A stretch of 64,000 nucleotides of DNA. Origin: Bispira polyomma (taxonomy: Eukaryota). Positions 5,448 through 28,500 of this stretch are shown here, piece after piece; position 1 is the stretch's first letter; the number at the start of each line of letters is the position of its first letter. The translations under genes and the position numbers were made by a program. Under the pieces are notes generated by a model. It worked only from the letters and a program-made list of their open reading frames with translations, was not told the DNA's origin and did no database searches. The stretch covers positions 40,672,001-40,736,000 of the forward strand of contig OZ287750.1 of assembly GCA_965649765.1 (NCBI GenBank), written 5' to 3'.

Positions 5448-5543
5448 CTGGAGATTCAGTAGTAGTCACAGGGGTATCAGGAGGGGGAGGTGTAGCAGTT
5501 CGAGTTGGTACCATAGGTGTCACCACTGTTGTTGTTTGTAGTT
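5448..5543 (-). CDS. Coding exon 42: 96-nt PT linker ([32 protein letters not shown])
   Basis: aag/GTAACA, phase 1-1, last exon found in the window. Confidence 0.82.
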
Positions 5544-8500
5544 CTTGTTAAAATAATATTTTACATTATCCAGATGTTACAGTGTATATATATATATATC
5601 TATGCACTTTCTTCTTCTGAAGGCTGTTTTTTTAATATTTAATAAACCTATTTTACACATTAGGTCTGTTTTTATGATGTATATGGTAACTGTTACACGA
5701 AGAGTATTGTATTTACATTTTTACTCAGCCTAACATCTATGCTTGGAAATTACTTTTCATGAGTGCACGAGTACAGCCACCCAATTCAGCAACTGTTATT
5801 CTCCCAAATAAGGACAAAGGCATAAGGATAACCATTTATCAACTTCACTAAGAGTATTTTTATCTGCCACTGGTGAGAGGTGGTCATTAGAGCTTGTTTT
5901 CATGAGAGCCTGTTTCTTCCTGTCAACTGGAATTTAAACTTGATTCTCTGGTTTTCTAAGGGACTGAAGTCTCATATATACGTATACACACATTTTTAGT
6001 TCTAAACACATAGACTATCCCTTGATATCTACTTGCTAATAAATAACTGTATTTATCAATACCTATTAATAATTTCTTACCTGGACAACATATTTCAATC
6101 TTCAAATCAGAAAATGTAAAGCATTGCCCACTGTTTGTGTCAAATGTGAAGACAATCATAAAGACATTGTCCACACCATCTGTGTAAATAGCATTACCCG
6201 AGCCACTTGGGAAAGGGAACTGGAAGAAAAAGTACATAGTATCATGTGATTCAACATTGTAAACCTTAACAAGCTGATATTTATAAGGCTAGATAGCAAG
6301 AGTTAGCCATCTGAATAGAGAATATCAAATTTATTGAAACAATAAATGAACATTTAGAACAACCAGGACTGCCAAAGTCAAGTAACCACATTGACTAGTT
6401 GTTAAATACCCAACTATGACATATTTTATATAACATGGAGTGTGTATCATTATTAATTTAGACATCTGCGGTCAGTGCACCGTTCTTTGAATAATATTTT
6501 AAAGATCTTGTATAAATTTAACTATGTATGAATAAAGAAGAGTGCATAATTTACCATATATTAAAACATACACTAACATCAAGATTTAAGCAAACAATGA
6601 TACATTATATCAAACTTCATCACCAAAATAGCAAGCAACAGTTACTTTAAATCAAAGTTACCACAGAACAAATGAGGTAAAAATTAATTTAAAAAAAATT
6701 TCACCCGATGTTTAGATAATAAAATATTATTACCGGCACAGTAATTATCCCAACAGTTGCTTTATCAAGGAAAACAACATTGACAGAGTTGACTCCATCG
6801 ACAGAAAAAGACAGACTCAGGACAAAGCCTTCTCCTTCTGGGCATAACTTCTTTACGTATAAGGAGGCCCCGTGACATAACAACAAGGTTTTGCCGGAGC
6901 CAAATAAGGCATCTCTGGGGTCAGCATCAGTCTCATTCAGCTCGCCCAAGACTTTTACAATGATATCATCTGCTGATTCATCAGCATCCAGGGTTCTTTC
7001 TTCTCCAAATGGACATTCTGAAATACATGTTTGTTGCTTTATAAATGTGTTATGTTATGTGAGATCTAAAGCAAAATATGGTTAGGACTTCAATAACTTG
7101 AAAGACCGCTCACAAGATTAAAAGTCACCACAATTATTTTATATACCTTGTTGACTTGTTGTAACTGGAACAGGTGTTGGCACAGGTGTAGGTATTGGTG
7201 TTGGAATAGGTGTTGGATTAGGTGTTGGTACAGATGCAGTTGTAGTTTCTGGTTATAAAAAAATACAACTTAAGCTTAGTAGAAAATGTTTGGGAATTGC
7301 ATGACTTTCCAGATATCCATACATTTGCTCTAAAATATTATAGTAATAAAAATAGTCGATAGTCGTTGTTATAGCTGTCCTCTAATATAAACTATCATTC
7401 AGGCCTCTAATATAATTAATCACTCAAACAAGTGTAAATTCAACAACCTATTACAGTTAACTGTAGTTAAACACATCTTTTTCAACAGCATCGACATTTT
7501 CTGAGATTGTGTGTAGTATGTGTGTTAGGTCCTATAGTCAGACACCAGTTTAATCTTTACCCAAGTCTAAATGGTGAATTGAATGATTCCTTACATGTTA
7601 TGCACCATCACTACAAGTAGCAGTGATAATGTGCATCGATCTGAGAAAAGTCTAATTTAATACAAACTATCTGTTTGGGTTAGCATTTGCTTCCATGTAT
7701 TATATACAGTCATTTTTTTTAATGTGACTACTAAGAGTGCAAGCACTTCGTTGTGTCAGATGAGATTAGATGGCACATAAGCAACAGCTTTAAAAATATT
7801 TTGGTCAGGGAGCAAAAAAGTCGGCAAATCTGGCTGATTTTATGGTGTTTTTGTGGTATATGTCCTTTACAATTATGATTCCAATGAAATGTCACAGACA
7901 TACTTGGCTGCATGGAAGCATAAATTGGCCAATGTCTGACAAAAAACTTATCTATAATTTTGGTCGACTTCAGGTTCGACGACCTGGAAGTGTTGGGTTA
8001 CTTAAAGATATAGCTGCTTGGCTAAGTTTTAAAAGGGTTGAAAACATGACTATCTCTAGAGTAGATTAAAATATTAAAAATTAATTTAAATAATTTCCTT
8101 AAATTCATCTCATGTTTCTGTCAATAAGTTTTGATCACTGACATATTAAAATCAAACACAATATTACTACTCAACTAGTGACATAAACACATTTACCAAT
8201 GACACAAACACAGTAGCACATTTGACTTGATACATGAATAACTAGACCTAGCGTATCAGAGAATCAATGCATATTTGTATCTGCCAGAAAGACAAAGCAC
8301 CCTAGCTAGCACCCAAGCTAGGAGCCTATGATTTCATATAGGCCATTTATGCTAAAGCCTTAAATGGCACAAGTGGATATCACATTGCAAACCTGTGGGA
8401 CCAATCAAAGGTGTGCGATAGGCACTTTAAAGTTTGGCCTACCCATTTAACCTTGGACCCTTTGTGCAAATCTTAAACAACAAAAGATTACCAGCCCATG

Positions 8501-11500
8501 ATTGCCTATAGGTTGGTTTCACATCCTAAACCTCTACGGCCAGTAATAAGTAAGATTTAGGCACTTTTAAGTGACCAAGACTGACCTTGAATGAGGGGCC
8601 TAAGGTTAAATATGACCACATGAAAAGATCCCCAGCCCATAATTATCTATAGGTTGGTTCGGCACTTCAAACCTCTGGGACCAATAATACAGGCATGAGA
8701 TATAGGCACTTTTAAGTTTGGCCATCCGCATTTGACCTTGAAGGACAGGCCCAAGCTCAAATCTGAGCACATCAACAGATTCCCTGCTCAAGGTTTCTAT
8801 AAAGGTTACTTTCAGATCCCAAACCTCTGGGACCAATATTAAGCGAGATATAGGCACTTTTAAGTTTGGCCAAAATCGGTCACTTACGGTACCTTGTCAC
8901 TCTGTCGATGACCTTGAATGAGGAGATTCAAGGTCAAATGTTTGCATGCTTATACAGGACATGTATATCCGCTAAACATATCACACTTAAAGAGATTCAA
9001 CCTTTTACAGCTGAGAAACAAACACAGTTAAAAGGCTAATTATTTTCAAAGAAACGCCTGTGGTGGCCATTTTGTTTTTCTAAATGAGGCCAAAATTACT
9101 CCCAGGCAAGCTTTTGTAATAAAGAACATTTCCTGTAAATTTCAGGAGCCTAGTTGTAAAAGTATTCCCAGGAGAGCGGTGACGGTAAAATCTCTACATA
9201 CACTGACAGGGCAGTGGCGGCAGTGGGGGCAGCTTAACGAAGCATAATCCAATGTATGCACTGGAGTTTTCCGGTGGATACAAATAATACGCTACTGAGT
9301 ATTATATTTATAGCATAATACTGCCATAGTATCTGTTTTATTGGACCCCAAAAACTAATTAAATTACATTAAGTACAGCCAACCAGATCTCATAACTGGC
9401 ACAACATAAGCGTAAAAGGTCATGGAAGAAGTCATCTGTATGTATCCCCCATCACTTTTGGCGCTTCATCAAAAATGAGTCTAACAACAAAACGGTAACA
9501 TTTATATTCACAATATATTCTGCTAGGCGATCCCTACACACCCCCCCCCCCCCAATAGTGAACATATATGGGCCATATGTCTTTTAAATAAACATCCTCC
9601 ACCATTAATGAATGTTGAATGTTAATAATCATTGATGGTGGCCCATTTCAAATCTATATCACTCTATAAAATCTTGCTTTCATACGTATGTTATGTCACA
9701 TATGACAACAGCAGTATATACTTACCAACAGGGCAACATGCAACAATTAATAGGTCTTTCACAAAGAAGCAACTATGACCACTGACTCTGACAAACTCAA
9801 AGACAACAGTTATGACATTTTCTACTGGACTTGCAGGTATATACTCGACTGTCTCCATTTGGTTTGGGTTACCGGGTGTAAGCTAAAACATAAATAAACA
9901 GTCATTCTAAAGGCTAAATTTGATTTTCAATGATCACAATAAAACCAATGCATGCCATCATCTTTAAAAGAACAACAAGTCTTTCCATAGAATTCGGCTG
10001 CTGCAATGATAAAATCCCGAATTTTTGCCACTGCACAAATGTATCCAGGTACACTCTCAGAAAATTGTTTATTCAATCAATTCATCAAATTATGTTACAG
10101 CGAAATTATCCAGTAATATAGTGGTTTAATAATTTTTAATAAACATTTAAGATGCAAGTTTACTTCTAACAACTTTTGCTAATTAATTTGTCTTGTTCTA
10201 TATATCTTTTAAGTAAAAAACAATAAAAATAAAAGTTTCTTGTAAATTTCTAATTATTTTTTTAAAACTTCTTAAAATTGTATTATACAGTCTAACCCCG
10301 TTATTTCGAATTTAAAGGAACCACACTGTTTAATTCGATATAACTAGAATTTGAAATATCAATCAGGGCCTTGTCATGACCAAAACACTTCAAAAGATCG
10401 AGTGAATGGACGATAATACAACTTAACCAGGAACTCTAATTTACCAAGATCGATTTAAGTGGGTTAGACTGTATTAATCAAATTTTTAGTCTTGTTAAAA
10501 TTGCAATTGTACAGGATATTTTAAATGTTAAAAAATGCATGTTAGTCAGTAATTATTAATTAAACTTACAATCACTGTATCAATGATAGAGCCTCCAGGA
10601 CCAGCTAGTGTAATTTTAATATACTGTACATATCTGACCCTTAACCGGATAAGCACAATACTGGCAAAGTCACCATCCGGGCACAGTGGTTTCACTAAGA
10701 GGAAGTCACCCTTACAGAGCTTAATCAGTTTGCCAGAATTAAATTGGGCATTGTCAATGTCAACAATATCCTCATGGGGTCCCACAACGCTGCCTTTAAA
10801 GTCGTTTCCTCCAGATTCTGAGAAAATAGGTTCTGTGTTAGCTGGGCATATGGAGGCTGTAAGAGTGAGAAGTACAGGATTAGACTGAATTTTTTTTATT
10901 TTTTTTTTGTTGTTGATTTTGACAGTACATATATACAAAGCACATAAAATCAAAGCTTTAATATATGAAAATAACAATTCTATTACATTATTAACAAAGC
11001 TGTTTTTTTAAGGAAATCAAAACTTTAACATATGAAAATAACATGTCTATTGATTGTGAAATGTAACAAGATAGGAATATGTAATATTCCATAAAAACAT
11101 TATATTTAATTGTATTCATTATTATCTAAAAGTTTAACTGCATATTTGATACTTGCCTTAAAGGCAAGTGTCAGTGAGCATTCCAAGGAAATATCTTAGA
11201 ATCTGAAAATTACACTTGATGACTTTATTTCTGCTAAAAATATATGTGCCTTAATGATAAACAAAGGAAGACCAAAGGCAAAATTGCATCAGAAATGTAA
11301 TAGCCCTTCCCAAACTTCCCTGAGCAATATAGACAGATGTAGCTCATACCAATTTTCAAAGAAACAGACCGATTGTTGTCTTGATAACTAAAAGTTAAGT
11401 CACTTAAGAAAATTTTCAGACCCAAAGCAGAGCGAGATCTTGTAATGTTTAGTCGATTCATTTTGGGGTTTAACTTTAATTTTAACACGTTTTGTGTCAT

Positions 11501-14500
11501 ATGGGGTAGCCAAAATCAGAACAGCTAGGATAGTTGGTCAAGGCTTTCTGGGCCTTCAGCAAGTCTACTAACAACTTTCCCACAGACATATCAGGAACAA
11601 GATTTGAGCCTATGACCGCTGAGGTGGGAGGCAAGTGTGTTACTACTACACCAGTGAGACCCAGAGCATAGTTTTGGCAACATTTATTAAGTATTGAAAA
11701 TGATAATGTTATGAAGACATAAAACTAAACATATGCGTAACTTCTGAGGTCTACTTTATGATATGAATTTCATCTCACAGTGAGTTCTTCAGTATCTCAG
11801 AAACAGCCAATGTCACAGCAATAAGGTCAAAGGTCAGACCGAGGTCATAGCATCAAGTTCACCATGGTAATGATGAAAAATTTAATCATGCTAAAAATTT
11901 ATAATCGTTATTTTGACTTTTTTTGTGCTCACTTTTACAGTGTGGAAAATAGATCAATAAATGATCATTTTAACCTTAAAATTTGACAAATTTACACTTC
12001 ACATTTTAGTCATTTGATATACCAAATACCACAAAGTCATGTGACTTACAAGTTGTTGTTGGTGGTTCAGTCGTTGTAACTGGTATTTCTACAAATACAT
12101 AATAATAATTTTGTATATTAGTTATTCATGTTTAATAGAAATACTCTCATTTATAGTTTCTGCAAAAGGGGATTCTGCCATAAAAGAGGCTTTCACTAAT
12201 TCTAAAAAAGTCTAATACTCTAGTCAATAGAGTTAAGTGGAATCTTTTTACACTGATGGCGACAGAATTAGTATATTTGTAAATGATAGCTTGATGAAGA
12301 CCCAAAAGTAGCACCTTCATGAATTTCGGAAAAATGGAATGATTGTTGAACTGCAAGGGTGGATAGGAAGGGAATTTTAAGGAGAGTTAAAATAATGTAA
12401 TTAAGTTTTAGAGGACACTTCATATCTAAATCGGCTAAACAGTTTTACATACACAATATACCTCATGTCTGACACGATATGTAGCCATGTGAATTCTAGA
12501 AAATGAGAAAATTAATCGCAAGAGAGAAGCTTCTATGCAAGCAAGGTATATTAGTATACCAGCACAATTTTGTGTGGCAGTATTGGTTTTCAGCAGCCTA
12601 ATATATGAATCATTTTCAGCCCAAGGGCCCTTATGGATGCTCATAAAAAGCCCCGAAATAAAAAATATATTTACTACTATTATTTACTTAAGCAGAGCTT
12701 GTAAACTTTGGTCTTAGTAATATTTGCAGCCAAAGTTCACAGTAATGATATATTTGTGAAATTCTACACTTAAATATTGTATTTTATTAAATACTCTTTT
12801 TATTTTTATAGACATTCTGAAAATGTCTTTTTCTCTTTAGTTTGAAAGAGTATCAAAGATGTAAATTATAACATAACATAACCCTACGTTAAGCATCCTC
12901 AACGTGCCACATTTCGATCACATAAGAGGAACAATGTTTACGAGTATATCACCGTTATTGCACTGATTAATACCAAATAATGGTACAAATCTACACAAAA
13001 TAACGTGTATTTGTTGTTATCCATCGGTAAGTAGGTCAATGAACATAAACCAATACGTAACTAGAGCACAGTTACAGGCACATATCGAAAATAGGCACAT
13101 CCACTATAAAGGTGTTTAACTAAATATTACTTTTATGACCAGAAAAATTACACATTAACTTTATAGGGAAGTGGGTCACTTTGGATGTCCTTCTAGGGTT
13201 AATGCCAATATAAAACTAAGGATCCAATCTTAGAATAATACCCATTAGTAACGCCCTAATTACTGACAATTGTGGTCATTAAACCATTTACAACCCGATC
13301 ACTCACCGCTGCAGCAGCCTATCACTGTTAGCTCAGATACTGTGACATTACTGCCGTCAATTAAGATGACTATCATGGCTGCACCAAACAGACCCTGCTG
13401 AGGTAAGCCCAAAGTCACCTTCTTCTTCTGATCAGAGTTAACAATAGCCATCTGAACAATATAAATAATAATTAATAAGACAATGGGGGGGGAATCTCTG
13501 TGTTAGCAATATTTGGATTATACTGGCCAAAACCAATCAGTTATACTTCATTTACACACCATTCACCTATATATGACTTAAGATATATAAATCATTGACT
13601 GGCCAAAGAGGATAGTCCAAAAGGCAGCGAAGTGTTATTTTCCAGAAATGCACCTACAGAGAACAAAGTTATAGGGTGGGCAGGTTAATAAAAAATGTGG
13701 GGTTTAAGTATACATCTGAAACTTCTCATATTAGTTTGAGATCAAGTGTGTTGGACCATTCCATGTGTTTTAGTTAATAGAAAAAAATACTAAACAATAA
13801 GGTAAAAGCAGGGGAAAAAAGGTTAGGCAATTCACTGAGATTAATTACCTTGACAATAAGAAATTTTATGGGCAAGACCTGATATTTTTTAGATATCTAC
13901 TGTCTGTCTGATTGACAACATGACAAGATAGGTTTTACATTCTGAAACTGAGCCTAATAAGCTTTCACTCAAACTAGAGAGAAATGCATAACAGTAGTCC
14001 AAGTGGTTACTGATTGTAGAAGAAGCACAGAGTCCTTGCTCAAGTATTTACAGATTTTTGTGATGTAAATTGGAGCATCATCTGCATAAAGGTGGTGGGT
14101 AACATTAAGGGTACTGTCTCAGGGCAGAGGAGTATACAGCTAAAAAAAGGGGGCGGTATACGGAGCCCTCGGAACACCATAGGCAAGAGCACAATTTACT
14201 CACACTGAGAGGTTCTATCAGTTCCACGCCATTCTCGTCTAAAATTACAAATGTGATATTTGTGGCCCCACTGATATAGAACATCAAGGACAACAGCTGC
14301 ATGTTTGGAGATCCAGGGCAGTTCTCTTTGATAATGAGGTAATCATCATCACCAAGTGTCAGTCCAGATTCTGTGAGTGTGTCATTAGGGTTAAGAGTTG
14401 GAGGTTCCATTGGAGTGGGTGCACCACAGTTGCCTTCACAGAATACATTCCACCCATTTTCGTCCTCATCCAATTGACTCAGTATTGTTCCTTCTGGGCA

Positions 14501-16423
14501 TGGGAACACTGTTAAAGGCAAGACACCAACAACATTTGGCTATTATTAGAAAGAGTGAAAGTGCTCATCGAACACAAAAGCCATCAGTGTACAATTCATA
14601 ACAGTACTTTATCTGGGAGAATAGATCACGGATAAATAGTTCCATTAGTAGCTACAAAAATAGTTCATAGTAAGTTGGAAAATATCCCATTATTTGCTTT
14701 AAAATATACCGTTGTCAGTCTTTCTATTATAAATAAAGTACAAAGGCTTGTACTTCATTGGGGATCAAAGAACAGCCATTTTTCCGCTGTAAGTCAGTCG
14801 GTTATTCGCCAATAAGGTACTCGCCCTTGAACTTTATTTTTACATTATTTAGTAGATCATTGCTTCAGTAATATGAATGACTTTACTTTTTACATAGTTA
14901 TATATATTAATATATATGTATCGGATTCTTTAATTCAACTATATTATCCGAACCTCTGTTATCTAAATATTCAATTTTATTAACACAGTTCCTCTTTGTC
15001 CAATTCATGTTTTACCATTGTTTTATACTAAAATACCACTTCTGTTTTAGGAACCTTGTATTACCCAAAACAAAAGTTGTCTCTCCCAACACGCTTGGAT
15101 AATTGTGGCTCAACTGTACTTTGATGTAGAATTTTAAAAAGGCGAAATAGCCAATTATTAAACATGATTCAATGTAAAAAAGGGGTGAGTTCTACATCAA
15201 ATTAACCTGTGTGGTCTTCTGTGCTACTATGGGATAACATCTACATGCAAGAATCAATGCTATGCTGTAGCTCTATCCCTTGTTGGAAAACAAGCATCTT
15301 AGAGGATGATAGATCAAATCAGCACTCAGTCTATTTAAATGTTTCAAATACCAGATCTGGGGCCAGCCGTATTCACGAACAAGTGAAAAATAAATTCACT
15401 TAGTTTCCAAAGTAAGTAAATTTTTTTCCAAAAGTTTGCCTCAGAAGTGGTATTCACTACAAAGTGAAAAATTTTACTTATAATAATTAAGTTTTACTAA
15501 CAATCCAAGTAAAGAACAAAATGTTAAGGTATCTCATCTGCTTACTTAAAATCTAAGTAAAAAAATTCTCCAAAGTAAGATCTAAGTGGTATTCATTTGT
15601 ATCTAAGTTAGTAAAAAATCAAGAAAATACTTGAAATAGAAATTCTTTTGTTCGTGAATACGGCCCCTGACGTTACCCTGTAATACTTACAGGTGGTGGT
15701 GGCCTCAATTGTTGTAGTCTGTGGAGCTACAAAACAGACTCTCATCTATAACAATCTAGACCTAGTTTAGGTTCAAATTTGTCTGTAGTTTTAAACTAAA
15801 TAGATATATAAACTCAATATACTAGATACTAAGATTGACTTTTAAAGTTGACAAATAGACTTTTTGAAACATAAGTGTGGAAGGGCTAAATAATTTACTT
15901 GAATTTCAATAAATTTCTTAATGGAAGAATGAACATTTTGTTTAACTTTGTTTTATTACATCAAAAGCCATGTGTTTTGCATATCCTTATTATAATATTG
16001 TTGTACAGGAATTGTACTACTAGTTAATACAAACTATTTATTTATGCTATCTGATACATACTAATAAGTTTGCATAAAAGACCTTTGGTCAACACAATAG
16101 TGCTTTTCGCTTCCTGATCACTCAAAAGTGCTTGTTTACCTTTGGTGTGTGTTTTAACCAAATTACGTAAACAATAATATTAGAAAAAAAGTAACTGTAG
16201 TTCAACCAAAAGCATACTAAATAAAAAGGTATACTTCAGGCCAAGGTTATTCAGGTGTAACTGCATAATTTATTATTTAAACATGTTCTCATGAATGACA
16301 CTCATTTAGGTAAAAAAATCTGAGTAACTATATTAAGATGTGTCTGTAATAAAAAAGTCAAAGTAAAAAACCTAAAAATTACGTCAAATCTAAACGCAGT
16401 GCAGAAAGTGAAGAAACTAAGTA

Positions 16424-16500
<77 letters not shown>

Positions 16501-19500
16501 GTATATTAATTATAAAATAATCCAGGCTAGTCAATCTCAGTCCAGGACAAAAGGTGACTAAATGCTTAAACTTGGACCTTATAGAGGCTATTATTTACCT
16601 TGAAATAGCTCAACTTGATAGGCTCCTAATTCTAGCCCATAAATAGCAGCGTTCTTTAGTTATCTTATTAAACATATACATAGCAGTGGTATTACAATAG
16701 TAATATCCCTTTGTATTGTCCAGGGATACAAGTAAATGATCCATGTGTAAACACTTACCACTTATTGTTGTAGTTCCTGAAATTATAAAAAAAATGCAAT
16801 CTTAATACAATAAAAAGAAACTTTGTCCTTGCAATTATAACAACTACACACAAGTCCCATCAATAAATTTAAAGTGCATCAATTTACCTAGAGTCGATAC
16901 AAGTGTTATCACAACAGGGTTATAGCTGTCACTAATAAATAAATGAAATACTCCCAAATTCTAATGAAATACCAAACTAGTGAAACTATATCCCGACTTG
17001 TCCTAACAAAGGCTTTATGACACAGCAGGTGAAATATGAAGTGGCTAAAAACTGTATAATATTGTCATATACCCCTGCGGGTGAAAAATGAGGTCAAATT
17101 TACGTTATCTCTTACAATTAAAGAGATGATGGAGTTGTTCGATATTGACAGGGTTCAAATTGTAATATCATACTAACCACTGCATAATTTTGACAAGGTA
17201 AAAAAAAATGTATATTGAGCGGTTTGTTTAAAACTTTCTCAGAGCACTTACCTAATAACATATAATTGTCACTCACTCATGATAAAAAATACCCACTGAT
17301 TCAGTGGATACAATTATCTCATAGCGAAAGTTTGGCCTGTCAGAACTGAAGCTTAATTGTGATTTAAACTATACCCTGTATTGCTCGACTCTAAAGGAGC
17401 AGAACAATGGTATTTAATCATTTCACTGTTAATGTTTTGTTTCATTTTGTTCTTTTGAGGATTTCAGATTAGTTAATTCAAACTGTAGAATTTTATTATA
17501 CTGGAATTGTGTAAGATATGGCACTTTAAAACCTTACATTCTACCTTTTACTGATTACACATAATGAATTTTCTACATACAGAATATAAATTGAAAATAC
17601 TTTGCCAATGAACTTACACGGTAGAATTAACACACCCAAAAAACATTGGTACATGTATTAATCTTTTGGGAAAATGAGTATTTAGCTAAAATTTCCACTT
17701 TATAGTTTAATGTAATAGGCAACCTTGGTCTAAAAACACGTCATACACAAATATACTGAACACTCTTACTGTTTCTGTATTAAAAGTAAAACTTCCCATT
17801 AATCAACTTACTCAATTCTTCCAGGCACACTTTGAGTACCAAGCTTTTGATTTTCACATCACTTGAGCTGAACAAGAGACAAACAAAAGAAGAGGCGATG
17901 CCATCAAAGGTGTCTCCAAAAGCTGCTTCAAAGTAGAAAAATGTCGAACTTGCTGGGTGCATCAGTTGCTTAGTCTGCAATATAAAGGAAAAACAAAAGC
18001 TTGGTAAAAGGCAGATGTCATTTCTTGTCAGACATCAAATGCAGGTTTGACTATGTTGTGTCACTTAATGCTGTTATGATACAGCTATAGATACAGTAAT
18101 ATATCCAATAATTGATCTCTTAATATATGTTGCCTTTATAGAGGAAAACTAAAACCATCTTGTATGACAGATCTATCCTCCTTTAGACTAGCAGTATCCA
18201 TTTCTGGCACCTCCATGTTTAATGACCTCTTATGTTTGAGCTATATAAGTATGGCACATTGATTTTTGCTTCATTGTGCCTTAAAATCTGTTCAAATGAA
18301 GATTAAGCACCTGGAGTAAGATTAGATTGGATCATCTGCTTTAATTTAAATCATATAAAATATATGAGACCAAGTGACCTTGAAAATGCAGAACTCAGAC
18401 AGTTGCAGGTAGATATTGTTAATTTCTAACTACTAAAATATTTACAACACCCATGAAGTGAATATTTACAGGTTTAAGGTGACCTTAACTCACACAGTTC
18501 TTATTCTAAATGGTAGGCTGCGCAATGCCTGTGATCATGTCTTTTGCGCAATGTATAAATTCTGTATAAAACCCCGTAGATAATGCACGGTACGCTGTTT
18601 ATTCTGTTCCATCAATCTCCCTTGAAACTAGTCTGTATTTAAACTTAAATATCTCAGCTATTTTTGAATGTATTTGATTACAACACACAAACAGTCATCC
18701 TAATAAAATAAGCTATCTCCTTATTTTTATAAAAAAATTTACCTTCAGTAATTTTGGTTTTTTTAAATGGCTTTTGTTTTGCGAACTCAGTTTTCACATG
18801 TTTGTATGATGAAACAGCCATAACATAGAACTGTCTACATAGTAGTCTTACTTCTGATGTAATCATGGGTCCATTATAATAAAAAATTAAGGGTTTATTA
18901 TTTTGGAATAGGAATTAAATACTTAAACTCATGTTTTATGTGCATTTTAAACGATCTCTGGATCCTAACCATGGGGTTATACCCAACGTAACTCATTCAA
19001 ATGTAATATGGAAAAGGTATTCTGTGTTGTAACGAGTTTTTTTTTGTGTAATCAATAAAAACAAATTAAAAAAAGGATTCAGACATAATCCAACCCACCT
19101 CTCCTGGTACTGGACTCCCTCCGTTTTCATTAAATGGTGTGACGGTTACCATATTAAAACCCTTTGCCCAAAATGACAGGGAGATCAGCCTCACATTGAC
19201 CCCTTGGAGGTTGAAGCACACCAGTGTGTCAGATCCAAGGTCTACCATTTGAAGGGAACCCTGGAAGAGGGCTGGGTCTACTGTGGCTGGCTCTATATCT
19301 ACCAGGGAGGCTTGGTTACTGTAGTCAATGAGAAAGTCCTCACATCGGGCTACAATTACACACATATACTCTACAGTCTATAACCTGACCAGATTATTAT
19401 AGAGGGCACCATGTCTAAACTGGAGCTGTTTCGTTTTTACACCAATAATTTAAAAGGTGAAAACTTCTAATCTTTTAGAAAAAAATACACACATAAACTG

Positions 19501-22500
19501 TCAATCTTTAGTACTGATGCACATATTTGGCATATCAATTCCAAGACAAAATGTTTTAAGCATATTTTTGTTGCACTTTGATTCGAAAAAATAAATTAAT
19601 AAAGTATTTTGTCTATACATTACGTACTAAAGTTTCTTAGTATTGAGGACTATATAATCCTTCCACTGCTACGTTTAAACAGGCTGAGCACATATACATG
19701 GTGGAACCTCTATTATGTGACCTTCTGTTCTTTGAATATTCAAACTGTAATTATAAACTCTATTACACTCTCCCAAATTTCTGTTTTCCTATTTTATAAA
19801 ACTTCTATTATCCAAAGAAAATGCTCTGCTCCAAATATATATTCAGAAGATAGAGGTTCTACTGTATTTAGTCTATACATTACGTACTGCAGTTCTCTTC
19901 ATCTGATCCGTCCCCACAATCATCATGGTCATCGCACAGGACAATCTTTGGCAAACAACGTTGCGTATCTCTACACTTAAAGTGAGTATCCAATGGACAC
20001 TCAGTTTCTGCAATGTTATACAGAAGTAAAATCATTTTTTTTGTAAATTAGACTTGTTATGCAACCGACAGTCTGCAACTATGACCAACTCAGTGTGTAG
20101 CACACTAGTCCACAGAACTAAGACAACCTGGATTCTTTTCTCAGTCTTGGGGTACCATGTAGAGATACTTACATAATGACTCGGATGACTACTTAAAATG
20201 GTGGTCTTCTGTCAGTGGGTCCTCTCCCAAGTGGCAGGCTAATAAACCTTCGGGATGTTGATAGTTTTGCAGTTTTTAATTGTATGTAATTAAGGAAAAT
20301 TACAGTTACTGGTAGATGGCCACCTCCAGGACTTTGTGTTCAATTGGGAGTAATGACAGTTACTGGTGCTGATTGGCTGTTACTGTCACAATGCAGTGAG
20401 ATAATATGTCGAGTATGGAAATACAATAATGACAAAACGGTAATACCGTTAAGGACAAAGATTCTGTCATCATCTTAATATATATATGGGGAGCATGGGT
20501 GTCCAGTGTGACTCACACACTGACTCTTCTTTTACTGGAGCTCAGGACCCAAATTGGAGGAAATTGATAAAAATGTATTTTCTTAGCTTGTATCAGCAAG
20601 GTTAGCATAATGTAACTGGTGTTGGTTTGCCTTGCACTTGTGAGGTTAAAAAAATGAGTTAGTGTTAAGAGTAGCTATGAATATCCATCTCAACATCATT
20701 GTTGTACAATTAAGTAAAATAATAAAATTATAACAATCAAATACTCAGTATTACTAATGAAGTAATAGTGAACAACCATTTTCTATGCTTCTAGCAATCA
20801 AAATTTTAAAATATTACTGTACCTGTACAATTTACTTCATCACTGTAATCCCCAAAACCGCAATCAAATTTTCCATCACATGTAAAATTGAGTGGGATGC
20901 ATCTTTTATTTTCACACTCAAAGAATCGGTGATCATCACATTCAAGATCTATAAACAGAAGAGTCAATTCTAATTTAAATTTAATTTTTTTATTATTTTT
21001 ATATTAACCAAATAAATTATCATTCTCCCAAAGAGATAAAAGATGTTCAGAATCTACTGTACACAGACACTTTTTTAAAAGTGATGGAGATGAACAAAGT
21101 TAGTTATATCCTCATACAGCAATTCGTACACTGCCATAATTGAAACACTGGGCAAAAATTTAAAAATCAAGAGACATATACATACCAAATCCCATACAAG
21201 TACATTTATAAACTTGAAAGGACATTGGTCTGTCAAGGCCATTTAGTTTAAAACCGTAAAAAAACAACGTCGGATCCGCGATTTTAAGTAGATATCCTAC
21301 ACGATTTGATGGATCCTTTCACAGCCCTTTCACCAAATTAAATAATTATTGGTTCATTAGTTGTTTGGTATTATTCTGGTGACAACATATATGACAGGTA
21401 TTAGCTAATTTCAGGGCTTTGTAACTGCAGGCAATAAGTAATTATAAGTCAAGTGGTTAAAACTGTAAAGAAGCCTTTAGTACAGTACTGTAGGCTGTCT
21501 AGGACCAAAAACAAACCAAATATGTGTAAAGCTGTCATAGTTTTAGAATGCTCTTAAGGATTTAAATTACATTTCCAAAATTCTATTACTATTTTAGATT
21601 GGAAAATCATCAAGAAAATTTTTTTTACAAAAAAATTTAATAAATGCGCACTTTGAAAAAAAGTAGATTATACTTAATAATTTTATTTTTGAAGCCAATC
21701 TACACATGAAAGATCAGAAAAATTATTAGAAGGGAATATGATTTGATATTTTAACAAAATGTGGGGGCAAAGCAACAACCATTTCTGAACAATTTTGATG
21801 TGATGTTTGTGACATCATATTGGTACCGGAAAACTATATTCTAACCGAATTGTATGTCCCTTGATACATCACAAAGGTCATGTCACTCTTGACTTACCAC
21901 AAATATGTTCATCACTCCCATCCACACAGTCTGGTGTTCCATCACACTTATACCCATAAGGGATGCACTGCTTGTGACTGAAACATTTGAACTGTCCTGG
22001 TAGACAATCAAATGCTAATGAAGAAATAAAGATAGACATCCATGGTTTATATCAGTATACATAGTTCATTTAATAAACACAAATACAGAACTGGCACCAG
22101 GGCTATTATTCACAAAGGTTCTTGGAGTTAAGTTAAACTGTTTGTACCCACCAAACTGGATAAAAGTAAAAAAATTCTATGACTGGGATATTTTATATTT
22201 TTATTCTTATGACCCCAGCTGAATACTGGACTTTATTGTACCCATACACAACTAGAAATGTCATCAACATAGCCAAAAAATACATAAAATCACCTTTTCA
22301 AAATATTTTTTTCCAAATCACAATGTTTTTGTTTACATTATTGCATACATACCAAGCCAAGTTAAATGCATAATGGCATTAAATAACCTCAATAAAGTTT
22401 TTCAAATCTTTTGTTATAATTCAATTAATTATTTCTGTCGCCAAGAAATAACTAATTTAGGAATTCTTCATTTGGGTTCTCTAGAAACAGTTTTCATGTT

Positions 22501-25500
22501 AATACATTCTAGTTCACAAATTCCTGTGTGGCTTTATGAATTATTAGTATATATAGCTGCTATTAACACAATGTTTACTGAAATGGACAGTCACTGCAGT
22601 TGGCCATGCGCATTCTAATGATACCTATATTGTATCCCCTACTTGACTGGATATTGAGTTAAATTAACTTTTAACATTTGAAGTGAAGAAATATTTGTTT
22701 TATACCTAAAATTAATCGGCATTCATGCCTTCGACTCATCTAAACCAACGCCACTTTCAACTATGCCTTTTTGGCAATCCAAGGTCATTGCCGAAGAGTG
22801 TAAAATCCATTTAGGAATCTCTCTCTTTGGGTATAATACCTGTTGATCCTTTTGGGTGACGTCAGTTTTAATCCTGGCCCTAATCTTAGACTTTTCCATC
22901 GGTGTTTGTTTAAAGTTAGATCTACAAGGAACAAGTCTGCTGCTTTCGTGGATTTTGATAAGGATAGTAAGGCTGATCTAATTGCAGTCACCGAGACATG
23001 GCTCAAACCTGAGGACACGGACAGCTTTATTGCCAGTGTCACTCCTCTCAGGCTACAAATTTACTCATGTACCCTGTACCATCAAGCAGGGCGGTGGGGT
23101 TAGTTTCTTTTTTTTGTGATGATTTGTGCTTCAAGCCACTGTCGCTATCCTGCTTTGACACTTTCGAAAGCATATCCATTCAGATAACAACCAGCAGTGC
23201 TCAGCAGGTTGTCTTCCATGTGTTGTACAGGCCTACCAGATGTCTCAAAGGCGCAGTTCCTGAATGACCTAGGTTTGTTCCTTGAGGGTACTGCTTTGTC
23301 AAGCTCTGACAATATCTTGCTAGGCGATTTTAATTTTCATTTGACCAAACAGGATGCCTGGTCACTAAAATGAAACGATACCCTTAAACAATACAGTTTT
23401 GTTCAACGACCTCACTGGTCAAGGAGTGTATTAATATACTCATAACTCCCACTACCAACATTGTCAATTATTCACTCAGGAAGGGCAGTTTCCCAAACTG
23501 CTTTGAGACTGCTCATGTAACCCCTTTACTCAAGAAACCAAGCCTGGATAGAAACATTCTAGAGAACTACAGATCAGTATCGAATCTCAGTTTTATTTTA
23601 AAACTCATTGAGAAAGTCGTGGGTAAACAGCTAAATGAATTCATCTCCCAAGAAGGTATTGCTAATGCTAACTAATCTGCATCCAGGAGCTCCCATTTCA
23701 CAGAGACTGCTTTACTTAAGATTCAAAAGGGCATAGCTATGTCAGTGGACTCGGGAAAAGCAGTGGCCCTTACATTACTGGACCTCTCTGCAGCTTTTGA
23801 CACCATTGATCACTCCATTTTATATGACTGTTTGACAGACTGGAATTGATGGCACTGTATTGCTGTGGATCAAATACTTCTTGACCATACACAAAAAATC
23901 AAAATTGGTAGCAGTTTTTCTGGGGTCTTTTTTCTCCCCTTCGGTGTTTCTCAAGATTCTGTCTTTGGTCCTCTGCTTTCTACCCTTTAAACTACCCGCC
24001 TCAGTCAAGTCATTTCAAAGTTTAATGTTACCTATCACCTGTATGCTGATGATACATAGATATACTTATCACTGGACTCCAGGAACTTTGACTCAAGTAT
24101 TGCTGAGCTCACTGGCTGTTTAAAATCAGTACAGGAGTGGATGGATTGTGCAAAATTATAACTCAACCCAGATAAAACAGAGTTCATTATCATGGGTAAC
24201 AAACTCACCACTGAGTCACTTACACTAAAATTTCCTTTAATTCCTCCAAAACAATATCACTCCATCAGTGGAGGTAAAAACCTGGGTGTCATCTTCGACT
24301 CGGACAACTCCTATAACAACCATATTTCCAAGGTTTGCCGTGCCTGTTACTATCATCTGCGCGACTTGCAACAAATTCGTAGATTCCTCAGCACTGATAT
24401 TGCAGTTCTGATGGCAAATGCTATGGTCAGTAGTCGCTTGGACTATTGCAACTACTTATAATATGGGGTCAGTAAGGTTAATATTGCCAAACTTTAGAGA
24501 GTCCAAAATGCTCTCGGTTGCATTGTTTACAGGCTTGACAGATTCAGTCATGTTACTCCCTACCTTTAAAAACTCCACTGGCTTCCCATTGAAAATCGCA
24601 TTCTTTTCAAGTACAACCTGCTGGCTTTCAAGGCTATTAACTATTCCCAACCTCCCTACCTATCCTCTTTAATCAAGTCCAGCAGACTCATTTGTTTAGA
24701 CTGGCATATCCACCACCTTAGTTACTCCCTGGTTGGCGCTCACTTGGTAACGACCTTTGTTCGATAATGGACAATCCCTAATTGGAATTCAGTGCATTAG
24801 AGGATTTTTATCAAATTTTGTGCTATATAAATGTTTCTATTATTATTACACGTTTTATTTTTATGACCTTGTAATAACAATGTGAAACAAATAATGTAGA
24901 TACACTAGTGGTAATTAATAAACAACTGTATTGCCAATCACATGATAAAACATTTTATGACAAAGTTTGCTTCAACTCATTGTTCAGTTCCTGCCTTAAT
25001 TTTTTCCCAACCTTTCTCAACCTGATTAAAATGTGGTTGCAAAACAACCAAACATTAACATAGAATCAATTCAAGAAGATGTCAAAGTGTAATTTAATAC
25101 TTACTGCAGTTTACTTCATCTGACCCATCTGGACAGTCGACAATTCCATCACAAAGAGCAGTCTTGTTGATGCAGGTGAGTTTGCCTTGGTGATCACATG
25201 TAAAGTACTCGTCGGTGCAGGGCTCACATGGCTCACCTGTACAGTTGAAATCTCCACGGATACATGTGCTGTAAACAGGGAAACAGTATGACATCTACAT
25301 GTACATGAAGAGAATATTACGCCATATGTGACAATACTACAGCACCTTAAACATGGTAAATTGTTACACTTTTGTGCCAAAGGAGTTTTCACAACAGTAC
25401 TACCGTTATTCCAAATTGTCATTTTTCAGCGTTCCAATTATTACATTTCAAATATAATGTAGGTATGTAAGAATTTTTTTACATATAAACTAAAAGCCTT

Positions 25501-28500
25501 GCTTGTGGATAAAAATATCTACTTGGCCACATTTCCTACAGAGCTATGCATGCCAAATCCCACAGATCACTCACTATATACATGTAACATTGTTTGTCAA
25601 ACATTTGTCAAAACTTATGACCTAAAACAATAAACTTCTGTGTGTAATAGTAAAACTACAAGTTTACTCTAAAAGCACATCTGGGTAGAACTAAAGACAA
25701 GGAGTGTGGTCAGGACTTAAACAGGGCAAAACGAGGCATAAAAACGGAGCATAAACTGCTCTGAACTTGAGCCGACCACCCATGGAAGTTTGAACATGTT
25801 CAAAATTTCCCCCTCTGCCTCCACATGTCACCAGTTTATGCCCAGATTTTAGACGTTTAGATCACACAAGTTTTTGAAATTGGGAGTAAAAGGGTCTATA
25901 GAATGTGAAAGTGTAAATTCGACATCAGATATCTATTGTATATACAGTGTCACCCAGTTAAGTTGAATCTGAAGGGACCATAAAAATTTGTAAATACTAG
26001 TTTTACATACATTTTTAAATTTATGGTCAATGTATCATTGTAGTACAGTGTGATACGTAGTGTAATGTACAATAAAAAAAATTTAGTTCAGTACTAATAT
26101 TACTGATTCCAAATACTTAAACTCTTTTGATGAACATTTATAGCAATATTTGGGATTGAAGCACTTCGGGCTTCTTGACCATTAAATGCCACAGAATCAA
26201 TTGTTTAATGTATGAAAAAAAAGCACAAGCACAAAATGATCAAACTTGTTTGCATGTTTTATTCCTGTACCAAATTTTCTATTTTGAAATAATTACCATG
26301 TTTGGCAGTTATCACGAATGATGGTTCCTGGTGGAAATTCTTCTCCATTATATACACAGGGACAATCATCAATGTCTAAACACTTGCCGCCTGAAAAACA
26401 CAGTAGTCATACTAGTTACTATGATTAAAAACAGGTATCAAATGAATTGATGACTTCTTTTAACATATCCATAGTCCTGAAATTACCATAATAATGAATA
26501 GTTTTATTATCTTATTATTATCAATAAGATCTTTTTACACCTGATTAACAGGCTCTACAAATGCTGGATGAACATTTCCGGACATCATAAGGCTTACTAT
26601 ATGGCCCCAAATCAAACTAAATAAAGATAAGAGTTGATAGTTCAAGCCAAGCCTGTAGAAACCCACTCACTTTTGGATGCAGAGGAGCTTGGTTTAATCC
26701 CATCCTAGGGCTCCCAGATATAGACAGATAATCCTGGATGACCACTTAAAATGGCAATCCTCTGTCACTGGGTCCTCTCTCCAGTGGCAAGCTAAAGAAC
26801 CTCAGGGAACTTATGCTTAAGCCTCTGACTTCAGCAATTTTACTTTACAGGTACCAATGGTGTTTGTTTGTTGATGTTTTTCAATATGGCCGCAAATTTG
26901 TTGAATAACTTGTTCATAAAATTTTAATTTGCGGGCACTTTAAAGCAAAAAAATGTGAATTATAGTATAAATTGATGTAAAATACATCAGGGTACTTCGA
27001 TTTAATCAAATTTAGCCTTTTGTTTTTTTTTGAGGAAGACCCAAACCCATAATCTACCCCTTTATTCATGCCCATAGTTATACTGCAGTATCACTCTGAT
27101 TTCTGGGACTTAAAGCAGTAATCAACCTACTAGTATAGTAATTCTGATTAACCCCTTCACCACTGATGGAGAGTAATTTTGCTATACCAATGGAGAAGAT
27201 TTTGACCTACTTCCATGGCATCACGGATAAGGTTTTTGCTATTACTTATTTCCTTACAACTTGAAATATACACTTTATTTTATGGTTAAAGCACTGTTAA
27301 CCCCATATAGATAGTATTCCTGTTTGCTAAGGGAGCTATATAATAATATTATATACTGTCGACTACTGGTCACCGGACATGGCACTGGCGAATAAAAATG
27401 GCCGTTAGCTGCTGGCCGAAGAACAAGGTCATCAAGGGATAAAGCCAACTCCATGTGTCACTTACCATGTAGGTACTGACCCTCTGGACAGTAACAACCT
27501 TCTACACAGGCCAGCTCATCACACAGGGGGTCGTGGGCTTCTCCAATGTTAGCACAAGATTGGTGACATGCAGGTCCACAGGCTCTGTACTCCAGTCTTG
27601 GGGGACACATGAAGGCTACAATGTGTGTACACAAATAGGTCATATCACAAAACTTAGGAAAAAACACCTCTACTTAGAAGCAAGATTTCCATTTTAAAGA
27701 AATTTTTTTTTTTAATAAGAGGGTTTTTGAGTGGTCCATATAAAACGGGATATTGAATTCTAATTAACAAAGTTTAACATTTAATTTAAAAGGAGTTTTT
27801 CTTTATAATATGCAAAACAGTAAACTTACGACAGAGCTTCTGACTTCTCCAGTATACAATCACACCAGCTTGTTGACAGGCCCTCACAAAGTTAGCCAGA
27901 GCTGTACAGAGACACTCACAGTCACCTCCTTGATAACAGCTGTAAAATGCAATGTCATAGCTTCTATAGAATTATTAGGTCAAATAACGAAAACTCAGCA
28001 CCAACAAAAACTTTTACTTTTATATATTGAGAAAGTTTCAAACAAAAGCACAGAAATCTGTAATAATCGCTATTAATGTTTTGTGTCTGTTAATGTAGGA
28101 TCAATAGAAATTTAGAAAATTTAATAAATATAGGTTTCTTTTTGTAAAATAATACCCATAACTAAATATATTTCACTCATATTTTACTGAATAATCTACT
28201 TCCATTTTTGTATTTCTCATGCAATTTAAAAAATTCAAATTTACTGTCAAATCCTAAAGTATATGAAAGTTTAATATACTTGGTTAGTGTCGATATATGC
28301 TTGTCATGAGGAGTCAGCGCCAGTTGCTTAGGCTGGTGCAGAGTTAGTTGGTAACCAGACTTCTTGGTAATGACTAAACCACATGTTAATACGCTTCTAT
28401 AAAACCTTATACACTTTAAAAAAGTCTCAAAGCCACACATTGGAGACAGTATAATCGAACCTCAACAATACAAATTTCTGTTTTCGATCAATTCAATTTT

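What the first reader, a model, noticed from the sequence alone, without database searches (positions are those of the whole stretch)
5448..19349. Tandem array of an unrecognised ~140-150 aa Cys-bracketed domain on mucin-like Pro/Thr stalks, grafted onto an SCO-spondin head
Seen: after LDLa-4 the gene encodes at least four domains of 138, 150, 148 and 141 aa. Each opens with a Cys (CE/CP) and ends in a beta-strand plus Cys ([31 protein letters not shown]). They share internal patterns ([27 protein letters not shown]; LISLSF/LLSLMF/VLSLSF; V-x-V..NENG/DENG) but have low overall identity, and are separated by O-glycosylatable PT linkers. Known: F5/8 type C (discoidin) domains are about 150 aa beta-sandwiches closed by an N-to-C disulfide and end in LRxELxGC. 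Chordate SCO-spondin has one such domain among thrombospondin repeats, and insect hemolectin has two. Inference: this is a very divergent discoidin/galactose-binding-like family expanded into a beads-on-a-string multivalent binding array on a polymerising VWD scaffold. It would be a candidate undescribed mucus, adhesive or immune-trap protein.
Basis: partly seen in the sequence, partly recalled or inferred. Interest (0 to 1): 0.85.

Follow-up and report, generated by a model that had tools for sequence, protein, structure and literature searches.

The report
Giant mucin with hidden discoidin beads
This invertebrate gene encodes a roughly 14,000-residue mucus-type protein in which long sugar-carrying threads alternate with 35 small folded domains that no sequence library recognises but that have the discoidin fold, an extreme variant of a mucin design already known from worms and molluscs.

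Summary
The four domains (138, 150, 148, 141 aa) are two-exon cassettes (phases 1-0-1), under purifying selection in a second species (dN/dS about 0.11). The gene runs on beyond the window: 35 copies, 15 giant (Pro-Thr)n exons (about 6,800 aa), then TSP1, TIL and a cystine-knot-like end, about 14,000 aa in all. A profile finds about 120 copies at several loci. Cysteines co-vary across the two exons, giving one fixed and two optional disulfides. No Trp, His or Arg is conserved, so lectin activity is not supported. Best reading: a secreted gel-forming mucin of the SCO-spondin-related invertebrate class, in which degenerate discoidin beads take the place that CysD holds in MUC2/MUC5. F5/8 domains in lophotrochozoan mucins are published (PMC4948705); the divergent family and the scale were not found in print. 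This scan noted similar genes on other DNA of this genome. No RNA reads were available for this species.

The parts
56159..56229 (-). First coding exon, signal-peptide-like (ATG at 56229, hydrophobic core, phase 2 donor)
   Evidence: Read from sequence; no signal-peptide predictor run
51107..51286 (-). Open stretch holding an EGF-like exon of the head
   Evidence: Pfam EGF_2 E 1.4e-6
43275..43535 (-). Open stretch holding TIL after the first VWD-C8 unit
   Evidence: Pfam TIL E 6e-11
39695..41013 (-). Exons of second VWD and C8
   Evidence: Pfam C8 E 1.1e-15, VWD E 3.6e-5
31734..32042 (-). Open stretch holding the end of the third VWD
   Evidence: Pfam VWD E 3.8e-8
27831..27941 (-). C8-3 exon; keeps the Asp-Cys that aligns with the first inter-chain cysteine of MUC2/VWF D3
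   Evidence: Best match VWF 1090-1126, also MUC2, MUC5AC, MUC5B D3; Cys1088/Asp1087 in PMC7599080
27467..27613 (-). TIL3 exon, short type; the loop with the second inter-chain cysteine of MUC2/VWF appears absent
   Evidence: Pfam TIL E 2e-9; aligns best to VWF TIL1/TIL2, and to VWF TIL3 only from residue 1145
19889..25294 (-). Four LDLa exons (within 25097-25294, 21881-22051, 20821-20949, 19889-20007)
   Evidence: Pfam Ldl_recept_a E 1.7e-12 to 1.2e-8
19099..19349 (-). Domain 1, exon a (phase 1-0); most divergent copy, counterpart of the first domain of the paralogous gene
17812..17974 (-). Domain 1, exon b (phase 0-1)
16759..16776 (-). Thr/Ser micro-exon s1 (18 nt, phase 1-1)
   Evidence: a 41-nt block around it is 88% identical in the ortholog L034
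15691..15726 (-). Pro/Thr micro-exon s2 (36 nt, phase 1-1)
   Evidence: no ortholog match seen
14204..14508 (-). Domain 2, exon a (phase 1-0)
   Evidence: (77% aa identity to ortholog, dN/dS 0.10)
13307..13451 (-). Domain 2, exon b (phase 0-1)
12050..12088 (-). Pro/Thr micro-exon s3 (39 nt, phase 1-1)
   Evidence: 47-nt block 81% identical in L034
10570..10856 (-). Domain 3, exon a (phase 1-0)
   Evidence: ortholog exon P0001
9726..9882 (-). Domain 3, exon b (phase 0-1)
7147..7248 (-). Pro/Thr linker exon s4 (102 nt, phase 1-1)
6734..7017 (-). Domain 4, exon a (phase 1-0)
6081..6219 (-). Domain 4, exon b (phase 0-1)
5448..5543 (-). Pro/Thr linker exon s5 (96 nt, phase 1-1); last exon in the window. 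The gene continues after a 16.8-kb gap to C3:40,660,659 and ends near C3:40,590,240

Best explanation
The window holds the 5' part of a 138-kb gene for a secreted gel-forming mucin of the SCO-spondin-related invertebrate class: signal peptide, EGF-like domain, three VWD-C8-TIL units, four LDLa, then 35 copies of a 140-aa discoidin-fold domain interleaved with Pro/Thr tracts (15 of them 220-650 aa long), then TSP1, TIL and a cystine-knot-like end; about 14,000 aa by summed exon lengths. Shown here: exon structure, purifying selection, expression of the spliced domain in frame with the TSP1/knot tail in related animals, the fold (predicted), and the cysteine pairing pattern (by co-variation). 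Inferred from VWF and MUC2: chains join tail to tail through the knot and head to head through D3, and the Pro/Thr tracts are O-glycosylated into hydrated brushes. Inferred from position and composition: the acidic, disulfide-closed beads are degenerate F5/8-type-C domains that have lost the usual sugar site and serve as structural nodes, in the place CysD holds in MUC2/MUC5, setting mesh spacing by non-covalent, possibly calcium-aided bead-to-bead or bead-to-protein contact. The identity as a discoidin-fold gel-forming mucin is about 0.85 likely; the structural-node role about 0.55.
For: Architecture: Pfam on head and tail exons, D3 match to VWF/MUC2/MUC5, array and Pro/Thr exons intact and in phase. 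Transcripts P0004, P0042, P0056, P0057 carry complete copies in one frame with TSP1 and the knot-like end; their tails match this gene's tail exons at 31-54%. Fold: pLDDT 95.7; VIA Z 14.5 IFT25, 13.2 HERC2 DOC, 12.8 CBM32; Atlas TM 0.75 to a eukaryotic F5/8 type C cluster. Cys co-variation p 2e-5 and 3e-5 over 24 distinct copies. D+E 14.6% against K+R 5.0%, Trp 0.3%, His 0.4%. Literature: F5/8 in lophotrochozoan mucins (PMC4948705); CysD as non-covalent cross-link (PMC3195396); SCO-spondin-like head and tail proteins in limpet pedal mucus (PMC7333891).
Against: No RNA or protein data for this species; the LDLa-4 to D1 junction is unseen in any transcript. No experiment on self-association; acidic beads would repel each other without cations. 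The best structural matches (IFT25, DOC) are not F5/8 domains, and no sequence link to PF00754 was found. The second D3 inter-chain cysteine seems absent. The knot matched Pfam only weakly (E 0.09) and no solved structure. Copies are related, so the co-variation p-values are optimistic.
Confidence: 0.55

Rival explanations
1. The beads are lectins: a multivalent glycan-binding array that cross-links mucus glycans or traps microbes and particles through a non-canonical site.
For: The fold is shared with CBM32, discoidin and F-type lectins (Z 10-12.8). Copies are very diverse in surface loops, and some 120 copies exist. FA58C domains are described as carbohydrate-binding in sea star footprint proteins (PMC9382459). 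One copy in the paralogous gene keeps two Trp in discoidin-like positions.
Against: Over 24 distinct copies no column has more than 2 Trp, 2 His, 8 Arg or 5 Tyr; the window's four domains have 0-1 Trp each. Sugar sites of this fold normally need such residues (own knowledge). The top structural matches are not lectins.
Confidence: 0.2
2. The beads are inert, protease-resistant spacers. Their number reflects unequal crossing-over of a phase-symmetric cassette, with selection only on fold and chain length.
For: Only Cys, Gly, Pro and hydrophobic core positions are conserved. Fourteen two-domain units are 99.4-99.7% identical outside the Pro/Thr exon, a recent expansion.
Against: Position-specific copies keep 64-77% identity between species whose synonymous sites are near saturation (dS 1.4-1.8), more than a fold alone usually needs, and distinct types keep their order in the paralogous gene's ortholog.
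Confidence: 0.17
3. The protein is a fibre-forming, SCO-spondin-like matrix or adhesive protein (tube lining, cocoon, glue or neural fluid fibre) and not a mucus gel former.
For: Head (VWD x3, LDLa) and tail (TSP1, TIL, knot) follow SCO-spondin (PMC8487547); the short TIL3 differs from MUC2/VWF.
Against: About half of the chain is (Pro-Thr)n, the hallmark of mucins. Only a few TSP1 repeats are present against 27 in chick SCO-spondin.
Confidence: 0.08

Closest known systems
Lophotrochozoan gel-forming mucin-like proteins with F5_F8_type_C domains (Lang et al. 2016, PMC4948705)
   Same: Three VWD-C8-TIL units, PTS tracts, discoidin-fold domains in the central region, relation to SCO-spondin.
   Different: Here the domains are invisible to Pfam PF00754, number 35 in one chain, and alternate with 220-650 aa (Pro-Thr)n exons; no CysD was noticed. 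The paper's supplement with copy numbers was not available.
Vertebrate SCO-spondin (PMC8487547)
   Same: N-terminal three VWD with TIL, LDLa cluster, discoidin-fold domain, TSP1, C-terminal knot.
   Different: Chick SCO-spondin has one FA5/8C, 13 LDLa and 27 TSR; this gene has 35 degenerate beads, 4 LDLa, a few TSP1 and about 6,800 aa of Pro/Thr.
MUC2, MUC5AC, MUC5B with CysD domains (PMC3195396, PMC7599080)
   Same: D1-D2-D3 head, PTS tracts interrupted by small disulfide-closed domains, knot at the end; first D3 inter-chain Cys kept.
   Different: The interrupting domain is a discoidin jelly roll with 1-3 disulfides, not CysD (five disulfides); LDLa and TSP1 are present; the second D3 inter-chain Cys seems absent.
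Galactose-binding domain-like superfamily: F5/8 type C, CBM32, DOC/APC10, IFT25
   Same: Eight-strand jelly roll with a short helix after the second strand, rmsd 2.4-2.8 A over 120-127 residues; N-to-C disulfide as in F5/8 type C.
   Different: 5-13% sequence identity; no conserved Trp, His or Arg; two optional extra disulfides.
Limpet pedal-mucus proteins P-vulgata_3 and P-vulgata_6 (PMC7333891)
   Same: One has VWD x3, C8, TIL, LDLa x5; the other TSP1 x4 and a knot in 1,860 aa: together the head and tail of this design, in mucus.
Insect hemolectin (PMC4948705)
   Same: [quoted passage not shown]
   Different: Hemolectin has two further VWD units after the F5/8 domains and little or no PTS; none were seen in this tail.

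Membership tests
F5/8 type C (Pfam PF00754) | Score above the Pfam cut-off | tested here: not met
   No hit for eight window exons or eight complete spliced homologues. PF00754 finds 100 places in this genome, none in the array.
F5/8 type C (Pfam PF00754) | Discoidin jelly-roll fold | tested here: met
   Predicted model of P0042:151-289: Z 10-11.4 to F5/8, discoidin I, factor VIII, CASPR2; TM 0.75 to an F5/8 cluster. Predicted, not solved; IFT25 and DOC score higher.
F5/8 type C (Pfam PF00754) | Disulfide joining first and last cysteine | tested here: inconclusive
   Closing Cys in 24 of 24 copies, opening Cys aligned in 22 of 24; distances in the model could not be measured.
F5/8 type C (Pfam PF00754) | Conserved Trp motifs and the closing LRxELxGC signature | tested here: not met
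   Trp 0.3% of residues; closing strand reduced to hydrophobic-x pattern plus Cys. One paralogous copy keeps two Trp but has no Pfam or PDB hit.
CBM32 / F-type lectin | Conserved His, Arg and aromatic residues of the sugar site | tested here: not met
   Per-column maxima of 24: Trp 2, His 2, Arg 8, Tyr 5.
CBM32 / F-type lectin | Measured glycan binding | not testable with these tools
   Needs recombinant protein.
Gel-forming mucin | Three N-terminal VWD-C8-TIL units | tested here: met
   Pfam VWD, C8, TIL on head exons; third C8 matches D3 of VWF/MUC2/MUC5. The first VWD was read by eye and order only (its exon had no Pfam hit).
Gel-forming mucin | Long PTS domains | tested here: met
   15 exons, 11 checked in full: 330-646 aa, 97-98% P+T+S, no stops, AG/GT, length divisible by 3.
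Gel-forming mucin | C-terminal cystine knot | tested here: inconclusive
   Terminal exon has 11 Cys with CxGxC and CxC spacing, Pfam Cys_knot E 0.088, no PDB hit.
Gel-forming mucin | Both D3 inter-chain cysteines (MUC2 Cys1088 and Cys1130) | tested here: inconclusive
   First kept; second appears absent. MUC2 lacking Cys1130 still partly dimerises (PMC7599080).
Gel-forming mucin | Secretion, O-glycosylation and gel formation | not testable with these tools
   Signal-like first exon only.
SCO-spondin (vertebrate) | VWD x3 then LDLa cluster | tested here: met
SCO-spondin (vertebrate) | Long run of TSP1 repeats (27 in chick) and a single FA5/8C | tested here: not met
   A few TSP1 exons in the tail, 35 beads.
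SCO-spondin (vertebrate) | Phylogenetic grouping of the VWD head | not tested
   No tree was built; the joined head model was left out.
CysD (mucin WxxW domain) | WxxW motif and ten cysteines | tested here: not met
   2-6 Cys, almost no Trp, no Pfam hit. The comparison with CysD is one of position and likely role only.

The most novel reading that the evidence does not exclude
A sequence-invisible discoidin-fold family has independently taken the role of CysD as the non-covalent cross-linker of mucus gels in a clade of marine invertebrates. It is expanded to tens of copies per chain in a family of giant mucins, with bead type and spacing tuning gel mesh, and it accounts for unannotated middles of SCO-spondin-like mucus proteins in other lophotrochozoans.
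Probability: 0.3. Interest if true: 0.75.

Novelty: new variant of a known kind. Interest (0 to 1): 0.52.

Why it matters
How invertebrate gel-forming mucins set their mesh is open. This gene offers a small, well-folding, repeated module that can be made and tested directly for self-association, calcium dependence and sugar binding. It also gives a new profile that current libraries lack: about 120 copies in one genome and relatives in several other animals go unannotated, so giant mucin genes of this type are probably split or missed in gene sets. The cost to novelty is that F5/8 domains in lophotrochozoan mucins are already published; what is new is the degenerate family, the copy number and the alternation with very long Pro/Thr exons.

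Tried and rejected
Pfam on window exons, on complete spliced homologues and on the Trp-bearing paralogous copy: no meaningful hit. Sequence searches of solved structures: nothing; a weak Als3 agglutinin hit (E 0.0013, two partial stretches) was rejected because the fold search points elsewhere. Atlas feature searches: low or unrelated. Alignment A4 (a- and b-exons mixed) was misaligned and discarded. Hits P0031 and P0037 are bacterial repeat proteins at weak E-values and were set aside. A metagenome scan for transcripts spanning LDLa-4 to D1 gave one unrelated contig. Sample accessions were not found in papers, so no organism could be named. Lang 2007 (PMC2042186) is not held. Limpet sequences were not in the supplement text searched. 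An assembly artefact for the 14 near-identical units was considered and judged unlikely, as each Pro/Thr exon differs in length and units differ by substitutions, but reads were not checked. The spliced window model was searched exon by exon by reference; the joined step was left out.
Full report
Observation. The window is C3:40,672,001-40,736,000 of a 1.035-Gb animal genome, with no N. The gene lies on the minus strand. After the fourth LDLa exon come four domains, each encoded by two exons with AG/GT sites and phases 1-0-1, separated by five phase 1-1 Pro/Thr micro-exons. Similarity among them is low but real: a-exon pairs D1-D2, D2-D4 and D3-D4 score z 6.7, 9.2 and 14.8 against shuffles, D1-D3 is not significant, and a profile built without D1-type copies still finds both D1 exons above all non-matching exons. 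None of the eight exons hits Pfam.

The exons are coding. A contig of another species (ENA ERZ22147071, L034) carries LDLa4, D1a, D1b, D2a and D2b in the same order at 64-84% amino-acid identity. Splice sites are kept, differences fall mostly on third codon positions, and pooled dN/dS over the domain exons is 0.11 at dS about 1.8. Two of the micro-exons are conserved as well, while introns do not align. Two more distant contigs show the same a-exon and b-exon arrangement, with matching boundaries read from the flanks.

The gene is far larger than the window. Profile searches of the genome and of 200 kb fetched downstream give 35 copies in this gene: the four in the window, one at 40.660 Mb, fourteen units of two domains, and two more at 40.613 and 40.606 Mb. 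Fifteen large Pro/Thr exons alternate with them. Eleven were checked in full: 330-646 aa, 97-98% Pro+Thr+Ser, no stops, in phase. The fourteen units are 99.4-99.7% identical outside the Pro/Thr exon, a recent tandem expansion. The tail has TSP1, TIL and a last exon with 11 cysteines spaced like a cystine knot. The head has a signal-like first exon, EGF, three VWD-C8-TIL units and four LDLa. Summed exon lengths give about 14,000 aa (estimate: head about 1,650, beads about 4,900, Pro/Thr about 6,900, tail about 550). A tandem paralogue starts near 40.558 Mb with the same head and at least 47 copies if the hits down to 40.373 Mb belong to one gene, which I could not check. Further clusters lie on C3 (40.31-40.34, 40.83-40.92, 55.01-55.04 Mb), C5, C11 and C2; about 120 matches reach E 0.01.

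Spliced evidence from other animals. A profile search of 1.84 billion proteins returned 40 hits. Of the 18 I looked up, 14 are unnamed exon-sized ENA or Logan fragments, two are JGI transcript-like contigs and two are weak bacterial hits that I rejected; none is a named animal protein. JGI proteins P0004, P0042, P0056 and P0057 carry complete copies in one reading frame, followed by TSP1 repeats and the knot-like end. Separate a-exon and b-exon profiles made from this genome hit them back to back, and their tails match this gene's tail exons at 31-54% identity. So a and b are spliced into one domain and the array is in frame with the tail, in relatives. No transcript spanning LDLa-4 to D1 was found, and no reads for this species could be had. 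That junction rests on phase compatibility and on the same order in the ortholog and the paralogue. I searched the spliced model exon by exon by reference and left the joined step out.

Fold. AlphaFold2 on the complete copy P0042:151-289 gave pLDDT 95.7 and pTM 0.89, an eight-strand sandwich with one short helix. Against 48,161 solved chains the best matches are IFT25 (Z 14.5, rmsd 2.4 A, 122 residues), HERC2 DOC (13.2) and CBM32 of NanJ (12.8); F5/8 type C, discoidin I, factor VIII and CASPR2 score 10-11.4. Foldseek agrees, and the best Atlas match by TM-score is a eukaryotic F5/8 type C cluster at TM 0.75. The window's own D2a exon, folded alone, is a half domain (pLDDT 77) with weak scores (Z up to 4.5), but its 50 listed matches come from the same superfamily. 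The domain is therefore a galactose-binding-like jelly roll. Descent from F5/8 type C in particular is inferred from the extracellular context, the bracketing cysteines and the position after LDLa; there is no sequence link.

Cysteines and surface. Over 24 distinct copies the closing Cys is invariant and the opening Cys aligns in 22. A mid-domain Cys co-occurs with a second terminal Cys (11 with both, 11 with neither, 2 exceptions that are alignment artefacts; p 3e-5), and a Cys before the fourth strand co-occurs with one before the last strand (7 both, 16 neither, 1 exception; p 2e-5). Copies are related, so these p-values are optimistic, but the pattern indicates one fixed and two optional disulfides that bridge the two exons. 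The domains are acidic (D+E 14.6%, K+R 5.0%) and nearly free of Trp and His, and no aromatic or basic column is conserved. The sugar sites of CBM32 and F-type lectins and the membrane spikes of factor VIII need such residues (own knowledge), so canonical binding is unlikely. One copy in the paralogous gene keeps two Trp in discoidin-like positions, in both species.

Mechanism. By analogy with VWF and MUC2 the chain would dimerise through the knot and polymerise through the D1-D3 head (PMC8487547, PMC7599080). The C8-3 exon aligns to D3 of VWF, MUC2 and MUC5 and keeps the Asp-Cys equivalent to the first inter-chain cysteine. TIL3 is of the short type and seems to lack the second. The Pro/Thr tracts would be O-glycosylated. 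The beads interrupt them as CysD does in MUC2, where CysD forms non-covalent dimers proposed to set pore size (PMC3195396). I take a structural-node role as most likely (0.55), ahead of non-canonical lectin (0.2), inert spacer (0.17) and fibre or adhesive protein (0.08). All of these steps are inferred.

Comparison with what is known. Lang et al. 2016 report that F5/8 domains are characteristic of lophotrochozoan gel-forming mucin-like proteins, that these group with SCO-spondin, and that vertebrate mucins lost the domain (PMC4948705). Chick SCO-spondin has one FA5/8C and 27 TSR. Limpet pedal mucus holds a protein with this head and another with this tail (PMC7333891). The design is thus known. 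I found no paper on a Pfam-invisible discoidin family repeated tens of times between long Pro/Thr exons, though the library is incomplete. The domain works structurally like a discoidin domain but fails PF00754 membership by score and motif; the protein meets the sequence criteria of a gel-forming mucin, with the knot inconclusive.

Earlier notes of this scan describe similar bead-and-thread mucins on other pieces of this genome (s1-656009, s1-694622, s1-688904); I could not map them onto my hits. The suggestion that the animal is an annelid comes from those notes and was not tested. A note on this same stretch (s1-691828) says the protein lacks thrombospondin repeats; the 3' exons show that it has them.

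Verdict. Real, conserved and expressed in relatives; a new variant of a known kind. Interest 0.52.

Noticed in passing
window 2900-4800 (+) and 22800-24800 (+): Two broken non-LTR retrotransposon copies (endonuclease- and reverse-transcriptase-like frames) inside introns of the gene, on the opposite strand.
   Followed up: no
window 16428-16497: A (TA)n microsatellite in the intron between micro-exons s1 and s2.
   Followed up: no
L011, C3:40,662,584-40,662,724 (+): An inverted fragment of a bead a-exon with a stop codon, in the 16.8-kb intron after s5.
   Followed up: no
L012-L016, C3:40.614-40.658 Mb: All 14 repeat units use a GC donor after the b-exon of the first bead type (GC-AG intron).
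   Followed up: partly
L016-L017, C3:40.606-40.614 Mb: A D4-like bead, a near-identical copy of linker s5 and a copy of the fifth bead recur after the homogenised array, pointing to an older duplication that brackets it.
   Followed up: partly
L025, C3:40,522,691-40,523,668: In the paralogous gene one a-exon is split by an extra intron; the split is shared with the other species (L036), an intron gain or loss in a single copy.
   Followed up: partly
L026:6796-7071 (-), C3:40,518,796-40,519,071: The fourth bead of the paralogous gene keeps two Trp in discoidin-like positions and is strongly conserved in the other species; the best candidate for a binding-competent or ancestral-type copy. Single copy in the genome.
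   Followed up: partly
L017, C3:40,603,742-40,603,924; P0042 residues 446-500: A conserved segment of about 45 aa between the last bead and the first TSP1, over 50% identical between distant species, with no Pfam name.
   Followed up: no
L028-L030, C3:40.472-40.493 Mb: The paralogous gene uses Tyr-containing Pro/Thr repeats (period about 10 aa) of 150-360 aa, unlike the plain (Pro-Thr)n here; possible sites for Tyr cross-linking or modification.
   Followed up: no
G000 C3:55.01-55.04 Mb, C3:40.83-40.92 Mb, C3:40.31-40.34 Mb, C5:9.27-9.41 Mb, C11:45.21-45.47 Mb, C2:81.87-81.91 Mb: Further clusters of the same bead, probably more genes of the family; DNA mostly not fetched.
   Followed up: no
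window 48977-49273 (-): A head exon with a weak TB-domain match (E 0.011) between EGF and the first VWD, also present in the paralogue.
   Followed up: no
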